From positions 8,494,001 to 8,558,000 of the forward strand of contig CATNEN010000029.1 of assembly GCA_950097015.1 (NCBI GenBank): a stretch of 64,000 nucleotides of DNA. Reading direction: 5' to 3'. Positions 31,082-50,600 of the stretch are shown one piece after another. Position 1 is the first letter of the stretch. Each line of letters opens with the position of its first letter. Position numbers and translations under genes: made by a program. This DNA is from Macrostomum hystrix. Lineage: Eukaryota; Animalia; Platyhelminthes. Under the pieces are notes generated by a model. The model was not told the origin of the DNA and did not search any database. It worked only from the letters and a program-made list of their open reading frames with translations.

Positions 31082-32772
31082 CTAAAGCTGGCTGATGGTG
31101 TGTGCGATGATAGACTGCAGCCGGTGGGCGGCCAGCTGGCTGGCCTTCAGCACCTCCAGGTGCACGCCGGTCTGGTCGACCTCCGAGTCCGAGTCGGTCA
31201 CGGCCACGTTGGTGATGATTGAGAAGCCGATGACCCGCACCTTGCACTGCTTGGCCACAATCGCCTCGTGGACTGTACTCATGCCGACCACGTCGGCGCC
31301 CAGGCTGCGCAGCAATCGGCACTCGGCGGGCGTCTCGAAGTGCGGCCCGCCCAGCATGGCGTAGATGCCGGTACGGAGTGACACGCCGCTGATCGCGGCG
31401 GCGGCCGCCACCTGGACAACAGGCGGGCAGAAATTTTTGACATTGTGACCCCAGCTACCCCCGCTGCCCTTTCTACCTTTCTACCCCAGCTACCCCCGCT
31501 GCCCTTTCTACCTTTCTACCCCAGCTAACCCCTCTGCCCTTTCTACCTTTCTACCCCAGCTACCCCCTCTGCCCTTTCTACCTTTCTACCCCAGCCACCC
31601 CCGCTGCCCTTTCTACCTTTCTACCCCAGCTACCCCCGCTGCCCTTTCTACCTTTCTACCCCAGCTAACTTTCTGGTAAAAGAATCCGATTTCCTAACAA
31701 GTTTAGACTCTACAACTGGGCTTATGGTCTCTTATCTCGTGTCGGGGTTGAGTGGCAGAACGGTTAACGCGTTTGTCTCTCGCACCAAGGTCCCTGAGCT
31801 CGATACCGCGGCGAGGCAACATTCCTTTAACCCTTAGACTGCGTAGTCGACTGCACGGTTTAAACGTTGTTTGCGGGATGGCCTGCACTGCAGGCCATAG
31901 ACAACTTTTTTGGCCACTGGGGCGCAGCCGCGGAGAGAAGGCTTGGGGGCTTGTCGTGCAATTTTCGCCCTTGAGGCACAGTTAAAGTTTACACTGTGTG
32001 ACGATGATAAATTCAGGGCAGATGTACACACCTGTGTGAGAGTGTGTCTGCGTACAGTATCTGTGTGCGTGTGTGCTCAGGAGTCAGCGAATTGGGCAGA
32101 ATTGCCTCCTCGCTGGCTGCGGGTCTAGTGTCACCAAATGATGTGCCACTGCCCCGCAGCCCTCCTGCAATTAATACTCCCCCTTGGATGCGCCACAAGT
32201 TGATGCGGCATCGCCGAACAGAACCAACCATTGCAACAACTCACCTTGTCGCGCAGCTTCTTATCGTAGGCATTGTTCATTGGCACAAAGCGGTCGCCGA
32301 ACACCTCCGGGCTCAGGCCCTGCAGCGGACTGAGTCCTGAGAAGCCCGGGAAGTTGAGGTGATCCCGGATGCACATGATGTCCCCCGGCTGGAACTCCGG
32401 CCGCAGTGAGCCGGCAGCGTTGGTGAGGATGACCACTGACACGCCAAGGCGAGCCATGACCCGCATGGGGAATGAGCACTGCAGATAGCTCAGGCCCTCG
32501 TACGGGTGCAGGCGGCCCTGCATGACGCAGACCCGCCGGCCGGACAGCTGGCCCAGCACCAGCACGCCAGAGTGGCCGTGGACGGTGCTCTGGGCGAAGT
32601 GCGGAATGTCGCCGTAGCGAATGCGCACCGCCGGCTCCTGGATGCTGTCGGCCAGCATGCCCAGGCCGGAGCCGCACACAATGCCCACCTCAGGCTGATC
32701 GGCGTAGAAGGAGCGCACATAGTTAGTGGCTTCGTCAATCATTTCCATGGTAACTGCTGGTGCGGAGGCCAT
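31082..32772 (-). CDS. PNP: Purine nucleoside phosphorylase (trimeric, mammalian type), 2 coding exons
   Basis: Exon 32772-32245 (GIVCGSGLG, IPHFAQSTVHGHSG, MQGRLHPYEG, LTNAAGSL, IRDHLNFPG, MNNAYD) and exon 31411-31082 (GIYAMLGGPHFETPAE, GADVVGMST, SIITN). A splice acceptor lies 6 nt upstream of the ATG, at 32779/32778. Confidence 0.97.
31449..31668. repeat. 35-bp minisatellite (CCCCAGCTACCCCCGCTGCCCTTTCTACCTTTCTA)n
   Basis: PNP intron, near the acceptor. Confidence 0.92.
31742..32172 (+). mobile_element. SINE family 1, full-length with a ~90-bp insertion
   Basis: A box GAGTGGCAGAACGGTT, B box GAGCTCGATACC, body GGGCGCAGCCGCGGAGAGAAGGCTTGGGGGCTTGTCGTGCAATT, 3' end CAGCCCTCCTGCAATT. Confidence 0.92.
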
Positions 32773-32902
32773 TGCGTCCTGTGGGAGTCAATTGAGATAT
32801 TGAACATTGTTGCAAATCATTTGAGGGTGTGTCCGCCCTACCTGTATATTATTCTGCTAGAAATTCAGAGCATATGAGGAGAGACGGAAGACAGCTAGCA
32901 GG

Positions 32903-44533: not shown

Positions 44534-46366
44534 TCAGAACCAGAAGCTAACGCTGAGGCTGCAGGAGAGGCTGCGCACGTGGTGCCACCAGCCCGCCGGG
44601 ATGAACAGCATCTCGCCGGGCCCCAGCTTAGCCAGCAGTTCGGTGGCACCCGCAAAGTCGGGGAATTTCTCCAGGTCCGGCTGTTCAACATCGACGCGGC
44701 TGGTGCCGGCGAGCAGGTTGGCGCCACCGACCGGGTACAGGCGATCGGCCTGGTCGGCGGGGTAGAGCCTGACGGCTTTGAAGCCGCGCACCTGGCACAG
44801 CAGATTCGGCCGAGGATCCTGGTGGCAGGGGGAGACGGTGTGAGGCGGCCCGAACCAGCAGTTGATGTCGGGCTCGGAGTCGCCCAAGCAGCAGTAGTCG
44901 GGCACGTCGGTGTCCTTGCCCAGGTCTGGCAGCTGATCCAGCAGGCCGTGCTGAGCCAGGTAGCCGCAGGGCAATATTTCGCAGGCGTGGCGACCGCCGG
45001 CTACGGCCGCAGCGCAGCGGGGCGCTACCAGGCGGCGGTGAAACTCGCCGAACGGCATCAGCTGCTGGCCCCAGTCGTCGTCAGTGTAGCGGGAGCCGAT
45101 TTCGATCTAAATCGGCACGTCACGAAAAAACGTGTACAATAATAGTCTGATCAAACACACAATGTCTGCCGAAATTACAGATCTAAATAGCCGCTGCAAT
45201 AATTCTATCAAATAGTTGGTATTTCTTGAGTGGCACAGCGGTCTAACGCGTTTGCCTCTCACACCAAGGTCCTGAGCTCGAATCAGCGGCGAGGCCACAT
45301 CCATTTTGGGCGCAGCCGCGGAGAGAAGGCTTGGGGGCTCGTCGTGCAATTTACGCCCTTGAGGGCCAACCTCCAAGGCACAGTTAAATGTACACTGCCT
45401 GACGATTAGAAAGTCAGGGCAGATGTACACACCTGTGTGAGCGTATGCCTGCGTACAGTATCTGAGTGCCTGTGCTCAAGAGTCAGTGAAATGGGCAGAA
45501 TTGCCACCTCGCTGGCTGCGGGTCTAGTGTCACCAAATGATGTGCCACTGCCTGCAGCCCCACTGCAATTATTATTATTTTATTATGACTTTATGCAGTC
45601 TGTGGTGCGTCAAGCACCTGGTACATGGCCTTATTCAGCCAATGCCAAGCTCAGCAGAGGGTCTCACCGGAACTGTTCGGTAGCCCCAGTGGTCCAGCAA
45701 GTACTGCCAGCTCCAGCGCTGCATAGCGGGCCAGTGGTCCATGGCGCCGCACACAATGACCGGCTCAGTGAGGCTGACGAACTGCTCCAGCGAGGGTCGC
45801 GTAAGACGAGCCACCGATCGGCCGTTGGCCGGCCCGGCTGCTGAAGGCCAAGAATCGTCGGCATTTTCCAGTGCGGCGGAGCAGATGCAAGGCTGGCAGG
45901 CAGGCGGCGCGGGCAGTCGGACGTGCAGGCGTTCTGCTAGGCCGGCCAGCCCCTGCAGCGGGTGGCCCAGAAGGAGTCCGCGGTCGCAGACAGCCAGGAG
46001 GTCTCGCAGGCGCGCTTCGTCAAGCTGAGAAGCGAGCTGGCCGAGCCAGGCGGCCATGAAGGCCAGGCGGGCGTACAGTCGGCGCCAGAACATCGGAGTG
46101 TCCTTCCAGTGGCCGCTGTGCAGCCGGTTCCAGGCCAGCTCCTGCAGCCGTTGACAATCGCCGGACAGTGTCTGCTTATTGTCGTCATCATCGGCTACAG
46201 GCGCCGACGCTGCAGCACCGAATCGGTTGAACAGTCCGTAGAATTCGTGCAGCGCAAGCGGTGCCACATCGGCGTCGGACGATGGAAAGTCGACACAGCT
46301 GGACAGGAAAGTCTCCAACAGCTGGTCTGGCTGGAATGGAGAAAGGTCACAGTTTCGAATCTCAGC
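44534..46366 (-). CDS. KDM8: JmjC-domain protein 5 (KDM8/JMJD5), 2 exons, no in-frame genomic ATG at the 5' end
   Basis: Exon 46366-45668 (AEIRNC..LAWNRLHSGHWKDTPMFWRRLY..CDRGLLLGHP..PSLEQF..AMDHWPAMQRWS..GYRTVP) and exon 45106-44534 (IEIGSRYTDDDWGQQLM..YLAQHGLLDQLPDL..VPDYC..NCWFGP..SPCHQDP..GEMLFIPAGWWHHVRSL..SVSFWF*). The H-x-D...H iron triad is intact. Confidence 0.93.
45228..45575 (+). mobile_element. SINE family 1, full-length, in the JMJD5 intron
   Basis: GAGTGGCACAGCGGTCTAACGCGTTTGCCTCTC..GAGCTCGAATC; 3' end GTGTCACCAAATGATGTGCCACTGCC..CAATTATTATT. Confidence 0.92.
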
Positions 46367-46384
46367 CTAAGTAAGGGGATACTA

Positions 46385-46490
46385 TTTGTGCCTTTGAGCA
46401 CCCCAGTGCTTCAGTTCATCCAGCTGTAAAATGTGTACCGTTAGCGTCTGAGTGTGGCGGCCACCCCAGTCCGCGGACTGTACAGATATG
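46385..46490 (+). mobile_element. SINE family 2, core fragment just upstream of the JMJD5 acceptor
   Basis: GTGCCTTTGAGCA..GTGCTTCAGTTCATCCAGCTGTAAAATGTGTACC..GTGTGGCGGCCACCCCAGTCCGCGGACTG. Confidence 0.7.
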
Positions 46491-47021
46491 TACATCTCTG
46501 GAGCGCTTCGCAATATTCTATGCAGAAAAATAAATCTGGGACTACCAAAATCAGGTAAGTGGTCTCAGATAAGAGTATACTCATACTCAAGTCAGCTAAA
46601 ATGCAAAACTAAACTTTCAGTCAAGATTTGGGGAAAACTTCTGTGGTTTTTATCACTAACCTATCCCACACTACTACAAGTAGGGTAGTAGGGTACTTTT
46701 ATGAGCAACGAGCTACATCATATTTGAAAACACAATCTAAGCACAACATATTTTTCCACCTCTTTTAGTTGCAATAAAATAATTATTTAAGACACATGGA
46801 CATGAAAGAAAGCCTTGCCGTCAGATTTCTAGGAAATTATATGAAAATAACAAATAACGAAAACATTATTATTTTTATTTAAATTAATTTAATCACAATA
46901 CAAAAACAGGTTCAAATTATTTTTTTAAGCGGAGAATTTCTAAAAAATATGATAGCTCTCGAAATGTTGACAAACACATTTTTTGTAATCGTTAATCATT
47001 TTTATTAAAAACCGGCGAGGA

Positions 47022-47312
47022 GTCCCGCGTATGACCCCCGAGTCATGCGTATGACCCCCGAGTCATGCGTATGACCTCCGAGCCATGCGTATGACCTCCG
47101 AGCCATGCGTATGACCTCCGAGTAATGCGTATGACCTTCGAGTCCCGCGTATGACCTCCGAGTTCGTCGCATGACCTCCGATTCATGCGCATGACCTCGG
47201 AGTCCCGGGTATGACCCCCGAGTCCCGCTTATGACCCCCGAGTCCCGCTTATAACCTCCGAGTCCCGGGGTCGCGGGTATGACCTCCGAGTCCTAGATGG
47301 GACCCCTGAGTC
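47022..47312. repeat. 20-bp degenerate minisatellite (CGCGTATGACCTCCGAGTCC)n
   Basis: Between the giant gene and JMJD5. Confidence 0.9.
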
Positions 47313-47608
47313 CTGGTAGATGATTCTGACATGGCTGATTGAATTGCACAAAAGCATTAGGCATCAAAATAAAGGATTTTAAAATATGAATTTAGATAAA
47401 AAATTTAGGTCTGAAAATTATTCTGACTGACATCAATTGAATGCAAAAATATGCACACGTGAATTAATTCGAGTTTAAAATGCATTTTTTGTAAATCTGA
47501 ACTAGAAAAGTTGAAGAAAAATCTATAAATATTATCGATTCGCCGTCGAAAATGAGTAAATCTAAAACATGTGTGAAAGAGGTAATAAAATTTGGACAGT
47601 GATTATGA

Positions 47609-50600
47609 TTAGGAAACACAAAAGTAGTCGGCACATATTCGAAAAATCTAAATAACATCTCGGACTGAAAACAATAGGCAATCGAAATTTGTCCGATTTA
47701 GCAAAAGAAGAAAACCGGATGGAAAAAAAGTTATTTTGTTAACACTTGCGATCGACTTTTTTTCAACTCACGCCGAAAGCAACCTCGAAATGGCTGGGCA
47801 AAGCGTCGAATGCCTCTCGCTGACAGCGGGCAAGTGCTCTGCAATGAGAAATGTGAGACTCAGAATTATTCTAACATCGTGTATGACTTCTGAGTCCTCA
47901 GTGTGACTCTTGAGTCCTCAGTGTGACTCTTGAGTCCTCAGTGTGACTCTTGAGTCCTCAGTGTGACTCTTGAGTCCTCAGTGTGACTCTTGAGTCCTCA
48001 GTGTGACTCTCGAGTCCTCAGTGTGACTCTTGAGTCCTCAGTGTGACTCTTGAGTCTTCAGTGTGACTCTTGAGTCCTCAGTGTGACTCTTGAGTCCTCA
48101 GTGTGACTCTTGAGTCCTCAGTGTGACTTCTGAGTCCTCAGTGTGACTTTTGAGTCCTCAGTGTGACTCTTGAGTCCTCAGTGTGACTCTTGAGTCCTCA
48201 TGTATGACCTCAGAGAGTTTTAAGTTTTTTAACTCTGAGTCCCTAGTGTGGGAATTTTTGCGCAATCATAATTATTACGATGAAAAAAAAATTGTTTTAA
48301 AATTAGAAAATGAATTTCTAAACAAATAAATCACGTAATCGATAATCGATCATTTGTAGCGGGTGCAGTTACAAGCTACTTAGCATCCTGGCATCAGGCC
48401 ACTTATCAGGCGCCAAATTATCTTACTCAAATTCAGCTCAAAATGCCGCGGCTACAATGGGCAACAGCCGCGGTGCAGTGTGCGAGCGAAGGCTGCAGCC
48501 AAAGCAGAACCCTGAAATAAATTTTCATCTAAGTTTAGCTGAGTTCAGGGGGTCAGTGGCAGAGCGGTCAACGCGTTTGCCTCTCGCATTAACTTTCCTG
48601 AGCTCGATTCCGCGGCGAGGCCACATTCATTTGAGGCGCAACCGTGAAAAGAATGCAGGGTTTTGTCGTGCAATTGACGCCCTTGTGGGCGAACCTCCAA
48701 GGTACAGTGGAAGTGCACACTGCCGGACGATGAGAAAGTCAGGGCAGATGTACACACCTGGGTGAGCGTGCTTTTTAACAAAAGCAGCCGTCTTTGAGAT
48801 GCCGATCTGGTGCTGTTGTTGAAGGTCTCCGTGGTCGCCGCCGATGCTCCAGACGGGCGATGAAGGGGACCCTGGTGACTGGGATGCTGAGAACAAAGGT
48901 CCCAGCGACTGATTGACCTAGTGGGTGTGTACCTTTTATTTCAAAATCAAGATCTTACCTTAGGACGCTCATTATCATGTTCATCACCATCTTCATCGGG
49001 CTCCATCGGCTGAATGTCAGCGGCAATGGTAGTTTCTCTAGGCTGATTACTGAAACAGAAAAAAATGTTTTTTTACTAAAACCAGTAACAAAGTGATCTT
49101 AGGCCGATATATATAAACATATATATCTATTTAACTTACTGAGAAGTTTGCATCAAATTCTCAGAATAACCAATTGCTTCTCTAGGGTCAGAAGACTCGA
49201 CTACAGAACGTGTTGCAGAATATCTTACTGACGAATGACCACTGCAGGATGCTGTAATATGGACACTGCTTGAATTATCTTCCAATGATGCCTCTCTACT
49301 ATGTTCTTTGCTTGTGGATCGTAAGTGATCTCCACACGGGTGCTCAGTAGACCCTTTTATTGTCGGATTGTCGAGTATGGTCTTATCATTTGTAGTCAGA
49401 CGAGAACTGACACTGCACCTTTTGTGACACGCAGGTATATCATTCTCCATATCTTCAGGACAGTTCTCGGAGTTATTGTTAAGATAAGTTCCTAATTTCA
49501 AGTCTTTGGCTCTCACGAAATCATTCGCCTCATCAGTGCCGGAGTCATTCAACTCATCAGCTCTCACGGAATCATTCGCCTCATCAGTGCCGGAGTCCTT
49601 CAACTCATCAGCTCTCACGGAATCATTCGCCTCATCAGTGCTGGAGTCCTTCAACTCATCAGCTCTCACGGAATCATTCGCCTCATCAGTGCCGGAGTCC
49701 TTCAACTCATCAGCTCTCACGGAATCATTCGCCTCATCAGTGCCGGAGTCCTTCAACTCATCTGCTCTCACGAAATCATTCGCCTCATCAGTGCCGGAGT
49801 CCTTCAACTCATCAGCTCTCACGGAATCATTCGCCTCACCAGTGCCGGAGTCCTTCAACTCATCAGCTCTCACGGAATCATTCGCCTCATCAGTGCCGGA
49901 GTCCTTCAACTCATCAGCTCTCACGGAATCATTCGCCTCATCAGTGCCGGAGTCCTTCAACTCATCAGCTCTCACGGAATCATTCGCCTCATCAGTGCCG
50001 GAGTCCTTCAACTCATCAGCTCTCACGGAATCATTCGCCTCATCAGTGCTGGAGTCCTTCAACTCATCAGCTCTCACGGAATCATTCGCCTCATCAGTGC
50101 CGGAGTCCTTCAACTCATCTGCTCTCACGAAATCATTCGCCTCATCAGTGCCGGAGTCCTTTAACTCATCAGCTCTCACGGAATCATTCGCCTCATCAGT
50201 GCCGGAGTCCTTCAACTCATCAGCTCTCACGGAATCATTCGCCTCATCAGTGCCGGAGTCCTTCAACTCATCAGCTCTCACGGAATCATTCGCCTCACCA
50301 GTGCCGGAGTCCTTCAACTCATCAGCTCTCACGGAATCATTCGCCTCATCAGTGCCGGAGTCCTTCAACTCATCAGCTCTCACGGAATCATTCGCCTCAT
50401 CAGTGCTGGAGTCCTTCAACTCATCAGCTCTCACGGAATCATTCGCCTCATCAGTGCTGGAGTCCTTCAACTCATCAGCTCTCACGGAATCATTCGCCTC
50501 ATCAGTGCCGGAGTCCTTCAACTCATCAGCTCTCACGGAATCATTCGCCTCATCAGTGCCGGAGTCCTTCAACTCATCAGCTCTCACGGAATCATTCGCC

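What the first reader, a model, noticed from the sequence alone, without database searches (positions are those of the whole stretch)
46300..47650. JMJD5 has no start codon: candidate spliced-leader-supplied AUG in a dicistronic unit
The ORF begins at a clean acceptor (CCCCTTACTTAG|GCT GAG ATT) whose TAG is an in-frame stop, and the first in-frame Met is about 90 codons in, after the conserved N-terminal helices. No GTRAG donor exists on this strand for 1.4 kb upstream, until an exon of the giant gene. Flatworm spliced leaders end in AUG, and use of that AUG as initiator is established in trematodes. Joining a leader here gives M-A-E-I-R-N in frame. The upstream same-strand gene has AATAAA signals about 500-640 nt before the acceptor, as expected for an operon. 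The PNP acceptor (6 nt before ATG) and the orphan's upstream AG (9 nt) are also in frame with such a leader.
Basis: partly seen in the sequence, partly recalled or inferred. Interest (0 to 1): 0.75.

Follow-up and report, generated by a model that had tools for sequence, protein, structure and literature searches.

The report
Spliced leader likely starts JMJD5

Summary
A two-exon KDM8/JMJD5 gene lies on the minus strand (46330-45668 and 45106-44534). Its frame is closed by a TAG at 46369-46367. The first in-frame ATG is codon 92, inside the conserved N-terminal domain, and is Val in M. lignano. No GTRAG donor lies upstream before 47771. These sequence facts hold.

Comparison with two M. lignano copies moves the boundary. 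Homology starts 10 nt upstream of a conserved acceptor, TTCCAG|CCA, with the exon starting at 46330. All M. lignano gene models start there without a Met. Their frame has an upstream stop and no ATG. The 36 nt between 46366 and 46330 look non-coding (GC3 5/12 against 0.79 in the CDS).

Macrostomum leaders end in ATG, so the likely product starts M-P-D-Q-L-L, not M-A-E-I-R-N.

The operon idea is unproven: the AATAAA count is at chance level. The "nearest donor" lies inside a conserved ATG-less 35-codon terminal exon (47838-47731).

The mechanism has been known since 2006, and this scan has already noted many such cases elsewhere in this genome. This is an ordinary new example.

The parts
46331..46345 (-). 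Proposed spliced-leader acceptor: pyrimidine tract plus CAG (acctttctccattcCAG). The first exon base is 46330.
   Evidence: 13/15 pyrimidines. It fits the published M. lignano SL-acceptor motif [T/C]TNCAG (PMC8629364). It aligns base for base with the M. lignano acceptor cccttcgcag|CCGGAC (A2). DNA homology to M. lignano starts at 46340.
45668..46330 (-). JMJD5/KDM8 coding exon 1, 221 codons (PDQLLETF...GYRTVP), followed by donor GTGAGA at 45667.
   Evidence: 63% identical to M. lignano P0005, with window residue 13 aligned to P0005 residue 1. Pfam ARM_KDM8_N and the start of Cupin_8 match. GC 0.65, GC3 163/221.
46091..46093 (-). First in-frame ATG of the ORF (codon 92 counted from 46366; codon 80 counted from 46330).
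   Evidence: It lies inside the ARM_KDM8_N match. The aligned M. lignano residue is Val, so it is not a conserved initiator.
46331..46369 (-). In-frame TAG (46369-46367) plus 36 open nt (AEIRNCDLSPFQ). It is probably outron, or at most a minor alternative acceptor.
   Evidence: No homology to M. lignano. GC 0.47, like the upstream DNA. GC3 is 5/12 against 0.79 in the CDS, binomial P=0.005; only 1.75% of 12-codon CDS windows are that low.
45107..45667 (-). Intron (GT...AG, 561 nt) carrying a tRNA-like SINE fragment.
   Evidence: Read. The junction RTVP|IEIGSRY matches the M. lignano protein. The repeat also hits M. lignano L001 10631-10741.
44534..45106 (-). JMJD5 coding exon 2 (190 codons plus TGA): JmjC/cupin catalytic domain with HQD...H iron ligands.
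   Evidence: Cupin_8 E=1.6e-36. 85% identical to P0005. Translation.
46370..47730 (-). Outron or intergenic DNA: AT-rich, with a 20-nt minisatellite (47005-47335) and AATAAA at 47006-47001 and 46879-46874.
   Evidence: No GTRAG donor. No phase-0 ATG...GT mini-exon with a good donor. No homology to M. lignano. AATAAA count at chance level.
47731..47838 (-). Conserved ATG-less 35-codon terminal coding exon ('exon B'), starting at a phase-0 CAG acceptor and ending at stop TAA 47733-47731. It is either an alternative last exon of the giant gene or a leader-dependent micro-ORF.
   Evidence: Against M. lignano: 7 identical, 10 synonymous and 7 nonsynonymous codons. Alignment A1.
48455..48514 (-). 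Conserved last coding exon of the upstream giant gene ('exon A', ...RGCCPL, stop TAG).
   Evidence: Acceptor, frame and stop are conserved in M. lignano (A3; tblastx).

Best explanation
JMJD5/KDM8 in this Macrostomum genome is an SL trans-spliced gene whose genomic coding sequence has no initiator codon. The pre-mRNA carries an outron that ends at the acceptor ...ttctccattcCAG (AG at 46332-46331). The spliceosome joins the ~35-nt spliced leader, which ends ...TTGCATG, directly to 46330. The leader's terminal AUG then becomes codon 1, in frame with CCA GAC CAG (M-P-D-Q-L-L-E-T-F...). The TAG|GCT site 36 nt upstream is in the same frame and could be a minor alternative acceptor.

Shown here:
- the gene structure;
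- the absence of any in-frame ATG before a conserved domain;
- the conserved acceptor;
- the absence of usable upstream cis donors.

Taken from the literature: the leader sequence and its use as an initiator in flatworms.

Inferred: that the leader is actually joined here.

Whether the outron is transcribed from the gene's own promoter or is the tail of a polycistronic RNA from the upstream giant gene is open. I put the operon at about one in three.
For: 1. The ORF is closed by an in-frame TAG at 46369-46367. The first in-frame ATG is codon 92, inside the ARM_KDM8_N domain.
2. Neither that Met nor M. lignano's first Met is conserved in the other species.
3. Six M. lignano models from two annotations all lack a Met. 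The three UniProt models that cover the N-terminus begin PDELL, exactly at the acceptor cag|CCGGAC. The two NCBI models are flagged partial and begin 1 and 3 codons later.
4. The M. lignano frame has a stop 18 codons upstream and no ATG in between.
5. The acceptor is aligned exactly between species, and homology begins only 10 nt before it.
6. The acceptor fits the YTNCAG motif reported for M. lignano SL sites (PMC8629364).
7. Composition and GC3 change at 46330.
8. There is no GTRAG donor for 1.4 kb and no credible ATG mini-exon.
9. The leaders of M. lignano, M. hystrix and M. cliftonense all end in ATG (PMC8629364; supplement of PMC10468722). Initiation from the SL AUG is established (Cheng et al. 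2006, cited in PMC12582326 and PMC5832876).
10. 30-39% of M. lignano genes are trans-spliced, and trans-spliced genes are enriched for conserved genes.
Against: No RNA evidence was obtained. The protein database holds no transcript-derived N-terminus for this gene. The NCBI M. lignano models start 3 and 9 nt after the acceptor rather than on it. The species of the window was not identified directly.
Confidence: 0.65

Rival explanations
1. One reading: the leader is joined mainly at TAG|GCT (46366), giving M-A-E-I-R-N-C-D-L-S-P-F-Q-P-D-Q-L-L.
For: An acceptor-like site with 11/15 pyrimidines, in frame. 0.2-1.4% of genes in M. hystrix and M. cliftonense show several SL sites (PMC10468722), so both sites could be used.
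Against: The 12 extra codons have no counterpart in M. lignano. GC3 is 5/12 against 0.79 in the CDS. TAG does not fit the YTNCAG motif. The site coincides with the stop that bounds the ORF, which any ORF search would pick up.
Confidence: 0.15
2. A small cis-spliced upstream exon carries the real ATG, and the gene is not dependent on the leader.
For: Tiny first exons are easily missed. An in-frame ATG at 46495 with a GTACAC 'donor' at 46438 exists.
Against: No GTRAG lies within 1.4 kb. The best phase-0 ATG...GT candidates match at most 4 of 7 donor positions. The region is not conserved with M. lignano. No M. lignano model has such an exon.
Confidence: 0.1
3. The acceptor is used in cis from the upstream gene. 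Either the giant gene's phase-0 donor at 48958 joins 46330 to give an in-frame fusion, or exon B (donor 47771, one spare base) joins the second AG at 46326 and keeps the JMJD5 frame.
For: The phases are compatible, by reading. Parasitic flatworms share acceptors extensively between cis- and trans-splicing (PMC12582326).
Against: Exon A and exon B both end in conserved stops. The 47771 donor and the second AG are absent in M. lignano. Phase compatibility is a one-in-three chance. No animal JMJD5 is known to me with such an extension (own knowledge).
Confidence: 0.04
4. Translation starts at the internal Met-92 or at a non-AUG codon (for example CTG or TTG at codons 16-17), without any donated AUG.
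For: These codons exist.
Against: Met-92 lies inside the conserved ARM_KDM8_N domain and is Val in M. lignano. The 79 codons upstream of it are conserved as protein (63% identity).
Confidence: 0.03

Closest known systems
Flatworm mRNAs that use the spliced leader's 3'-terminal AUG as initiator (Cheng, Cohen, Ndegwa and Davis 2006, J Biol Chem 281:733, shown in Schistosoma; cited in PMC12582326 and PMC5832876)
   Same: The leader ends in AUG. The acceptor sits directly before the first sense codon, in frame. There is no genomic ATG.
   Different: This is a free-living macrostomid and another gene (JMJD5/KDM8). Here the join is inferred from DNA and orthology, not shown by cDNA.
SL trans-splicing and operons in Macrostomum lignano (Wudarski et al. 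2017, PMC5730564; Ustyantsev and Berezikov 2021, PMC8629364) and in M. hystrix and M. cliftonense (Wiberg et al. 2023, PMC10468722)
   Same: Same genus and same leader (...ATTTATTGCATG). The acceptor is of YTNCAG type. The target is a conserved housekeeping-type gene. The genes form a same-strand cluster.
   Different: The published operon criterion is a repeat-adjusted gap under 1 kb between transcripts. Here only stop-to-acceptor distances are known: 1.40 kb, or 1.07 kb without the minisatellite, from exon B, and 2.1 kb from exon A.
M. lignano JMJD5 orthologues (UniProt A0A1I8JL31 and A0A1I8HP88; NCBI PAA89034.1 and PAA77045.1, flagged 'partial')
   Same: Same two-exon structure, same acceptor position, no Met; 63% and 85% identity in the two exons. 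Same neighbours (large upstream gene, then JMJD5, CAP, PNP).
   Different: A minisatellite abuts the acceptor in M. lignano. The window has 36 open in-frame nt and a TAG there instead.

Membership tests
mRNA initiated at the spliced-leader AUG (flatworm type) | The organism has an SL RNA whose leader ends in AUG | tested here: met
The window is a Macrostomum by 71-82% DNA identity and gene order with M. lignano. The window itself holds no SL gene. The species was not identified directly.
mRNA initiated at the spliced-leader AUG (flatworm type) | A 3' splice acceptor directly before the first sense codon, with no cis donor upstream to pair with it | tested here: met
   Conserved TTCCAG|CCA acceptor at 46330. 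Nearest GTRAG at 47771, and that one lies inside a conserved ORF.
mRNA initiated at the spliced-leader AUG (flatworm type) | No in-frame genomic ATG between the upstream stop and the conserved coding sequence | tested here: met
   Window: TAG at 46369-46367, first ATG at codon 92. M. lignano: stop 18 codons upstream, no ATG.
mRNA initiated at the spliced-leader AUG (flatworm type) | The acceptor is in phase 0, so the leader AUG is in frame | tested here: met
   Both 46330 and 46366 have frame offset 0.
mRNA initiated at the spliced-leader AUG (flatworm type) | cDNA or reads with the leader joined at the acceptor | not testable with these tools
No transcript-derived protein was in the database.
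SL-resolved operon (polycistronic unit) | Short gap between the upstream gene's poly(A) site and the downstream SL acceptor (under 1 kb repeat-adjusted in M. lignano) | tested here: inconclusive
   Stop-to-acceptor distance is 1.40 kb from exon B (1.07 kb without the 331-bp minisatellite) and 2.1 kb from exon A. The poly(A) site is unknown. AATAAA is at chance level.
SL-resolved operon (polycistronic unit) | A precursor RNA spanning both genes | not testable with these tools
Conserved same-strand gene order is compatible with an operon but is not evidence for one.
KDM8/JMJD5 JmjC hydroxylase | Cupin_8/JmjC domain with HxD...H iron ligands, plus the KDM8 N-terminal helical domain | tested here: met
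   Cupin_8 E=1.6e-36. ARM_KDM8_N scores 25.5 bits, just under its cut-off of 27. CHQDP and WWHHV are present in exon 2.

The most novel reading that the evidence does not exclude
The conserved 35-codon ORF at 47838-47731 may not be an alternative last exon of the giant gene. It begins at a phase-0 acceptor, has no ATG, and shows 10 synonymous against 7 nonsynonymous differences from M. lignano. It could be a separate micro-gene whose only possible start codon is the leader's AUG. The locus would then be a giant gene, micropeptide, JMJD5 polycistron in which two consecutive cistrons depend wholly on the leader for initiation.
Probability: 0.1. Interest if true: 0.45.

Novelty: new member of a known kind. 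Interest (0 to 1): 0.2.

Why it matters
For annotation, JMJD5 in Macrostomum genomes is not a 5'-truncated or broken gene. Gene finders that demand a genomic ATG will cut it to Met-92 or mark it partial, as has happened in M. lignano. It adds one more conserved gene to the set that depends on the leader AUG. It also shows that the acceptor position, not the open frame, should define the N-terminus. It does not change what is known about the mechanism.

Tried and rejected
I did not pass it run ids from papers, because it asks for ids from that tool.
- Two word-based protein searches looked for transcript-derived N-termini. The ORF from 46366 to its first stop (243 aa) and the first 122 aa found only M. 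lignano genome models and one distant protein.
- The cluster of the M. lignano protein holds no Met-bearing member.
- A search for the M. lignano gene id Mlig024268 in papers and supplements found nothing.
- The leader sequence is not in the window.
- ARAGORN found no tRNA in the SINE-like repeats.
- tblastx of the giant exon against the 10 kb upstream of M. lignano JMJD5 gave only low-complexity matches. The orthology of the giant gene to the annotated 1089-aa M. lignano gene is therefore open.
- Exons were searched apart, by reference.
- The large representative search, structure prediction and fold search were not used, because the protein family is not in doubt.
- Pseudogene reading rejected: both exons are open and conserved, at 63% and 85% identity.
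Full report
**What is there**

On the minus strand the window carries a two-exon gene for a KDM8/JMJD5-type JmjC hydroxylase.

- Exon 2 (45106-44534, stop TGA 44536-44534) matches Pfam Cupin_8 at E=1.6e-36 and carries the HQD...H iron ligands.
- Exon 1 ends at 45668, before a GTGAGA donor. It matches the KDM8 N-terminal ARM domain (25.5 bits) and the start of Cupin_8.
- The junction RTVP|IEIGSRY is the same as in the Macrostomum lignano protein.
- The reading frame of exon 1 is closed upstream by a TAG at 46369-46367.
- The first in-frame ATG is codon 92 (46093-46091), inside the ARM_KDM8_N match.

**Check of the observation**

- the text ccccttacttag|GCTGAGATT;
- no GTRAG on this strand until 47771;
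- AATAAA 513 and 640 nt upstream of 46366;
- the PNP acceptor 6 nt before its ATG.

Two of them carry less weight than they seem to. An ORF is by definition bounded by a stop, and a TAG stop always looks like an acceptor. Two AATAAA in 1.36 kb of this AT-rich DNA is what chance gives (0.87 expected, P=0.22; the other strand has four).

**Where the exon really begins**

The closest relatives found are M. lignano proteins from two annotations: UniProt A0A1I8JL31, A0A1I8HP88 and A0A1I8F1S8, and NCBI PAA89034.1 and PAA77045.1, both flagged partial. None has a Met. The UniProt models begin PDELL.

I fetched two genomic copies (L001, L002).

- In both, PDELL begins exactly at an acceptor, cccttcgcag|CCGGACGAG.
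- In both, the frame has a stop 18 codons upstream with no ATG between.
- DNA homology between the window and M. lignano starts at window 46340. The CAG|CC of the two species aligns base for base with window ttccag|CCAGAC, exon start 46330.
- Window residue 13 aligns with residue 1 of the M. lignano protein, at 63% identity over exon 1 and 85% over exon 2.

The 36 nt between 46366 and 46331 have no counterpart in M. lignano. Their GC is 0.47, like the DNA upstream, against 0.65 in the exon. Their GC3 is 5/12 against 0.79 in the CDS (binomial P=0.005; only 1.75% of 12-codon windows of the CDS are that low).

The 46330 acceptor has 13/15 pyrimidines and fits [T/C]TNCAG, the motif reported as most enriched at M. 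lignano SL sites (PMC8629364). The 46366 site is a TAG with 11/15 pyrimidines. Both are in frame, so the choice changes only 12 residues of the predicted protein.

**Why a donated AUG is the best explanation**

- The 79 codons between 46330 and the first ATG are conserved as protein. The window's Met-92 is Val in M. lignano, and M. lignano's first Met is Phe in the window. Neither internal Met is therefore a conserved initiator.
- No phase-0 ATG...GT mini-exon with a reasonable donor exists in the 1.36 kb upstream. The best candidates match 4 of 7 donor positions. That DNA is not conserved with M. lignano.
- The leaders of M. lignano, M. hystrix and M. cliftonense end ...ATTTATTGCATG (PMC8629364; supplement of PMC10468722).
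- Use of that AUG as initiator is established in flatworms (Cheng et al. 2006, as cited in PMC12582326 and PMC5832876).
- The M. lignano annotation pipeline trims leaders and cuts transcripts at SL sites (PMC5730564). That is the expected origin of Met-less models beginning at an acceptor.

The protein collection holds no transcript-derived N-terminus for this gene. The join is therefore inferred, not shown.

**The upstream gene and the operon idea**

The giant 8.8-kb exon ends at a donor at 49139. A 91-nt exon follows (49049-48959), ending in phase 0 by my reading. Then comes a short exon, 48514-48455, ending ...RGCCPL-stop. Its acceptor, frame and stop are conserved in M. lignano.

About 620 nt further on lies a second conserved block, 47838-47731. 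It starts at a phase-0 CAG acceptor, has no ATG, and encodes 35 residues up to a TAA. It differs from M. lignano by 10 synonymous and 7 nonsynonymous codon changes, with 7 codons identical. That is a coding signature.

It reads GCGAGC in M. lignano, and the conserved residues run past it, so it is probably not a donor. This block is either an alternative last exon of the giant gene or a separate leader-dependent micro-ORF.

From its stop to the JMJD5 acceptor is 1.40 kb, or 1.07 kb without the 331-bp minisatellite. From the first stop it is 2.1 kb. The published M. lignano operon criterion is a repeat-adjusted gap under 1 kb between transcripts. The poly(A) site is unknown here, so the test is inconclusive.

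The order large gene, JMJD5, CAP, PNP, all on one strand, is the same in M. lignano. That is compatible with an operon but equally with plain synteny. I put the dicistronic reading at about one in three.

**Comparison with what is known, and novelty**

The mechanism was shown in schistosomes in 2006 and is assumed for Macrostomum in the genome papers read here. This scan's own notes list many ATG-less genes in this same genome, several reported as confirmed with RNA data (s1-408126, s1-408140, s1-366064 and others; not checked by me). One was refuted by a tiny upstream exon (s1-316733), which is why I keep a 10% rival.

This finding is a further, ordinary member of a known kind. Its useful points are two: the corrected junction, and the note that the M. 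lignano orthologue is annotated as 'partial' for the same reason.

**Procedural remarks**

The spliced protein was never joined for a search. Exons were searched by reference, apart. 

Noticed in passing
window 47731-47838 (-); L001 4799-4891: A conserved ATG-less 35-codon ORF begins at a phase-0 acceptor between the giant gene and JMJD5. Against M. lignano it shows 10 synonymous and 7 nonsynonymous changes. It is either an alternative last exon or a leader-initiated micropeptide.
   Followed up: partly
window 48455-48514 (-); L001 3586-3648: The conserved last coding exon of the giant acidic-repeat gene ends ...RGCCPL-stop. This Cys-Cys C-terminus could be a lipidation signal.
   Followed up: partly
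L003 1-19351 and window 31085-58003: The gene order large upstream gene, JMJD5, CAP-domain gene, PNP, all on one strand, is the same in M. lignano and in the window.
   Followed up: partly
P0006 (UniProt A0A1I8F1S8, M. lignano): One M. lignano model fuses JMJD5, cut within its last exon, to the downstream CAP-domain protein. This may reflect read-through or polycistronic RNA joined at the CAP gene's acceptor.
   Followed up: no
window 45230-45470 and 48540-48780; L001 10631-10741: Copies of a tRNA-like SINE lie in the JMJD5 intron and in an intron of the giant gene. ARAGORN calls no tRNA. The same repeat family is present in M. lignano.
   Followed up: partly
window 47005-47335, 47880-48215; L001 5590-5975: 20-nt minisatellites sit directly upstream of splice acceptors in both species: before exon B in the window, and before the JMJD5 acceptor and exon B in M. 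lignano. The placement recurs without an obvious reason.
   Followed up: no
window 32772-32790 (-): The PNP gene has an acceptor cccacag followed by GACGCA and its own ATG. A leader joined there would add an in-frame upstream AUG (M-D-A-M...).
   Followed up: partly
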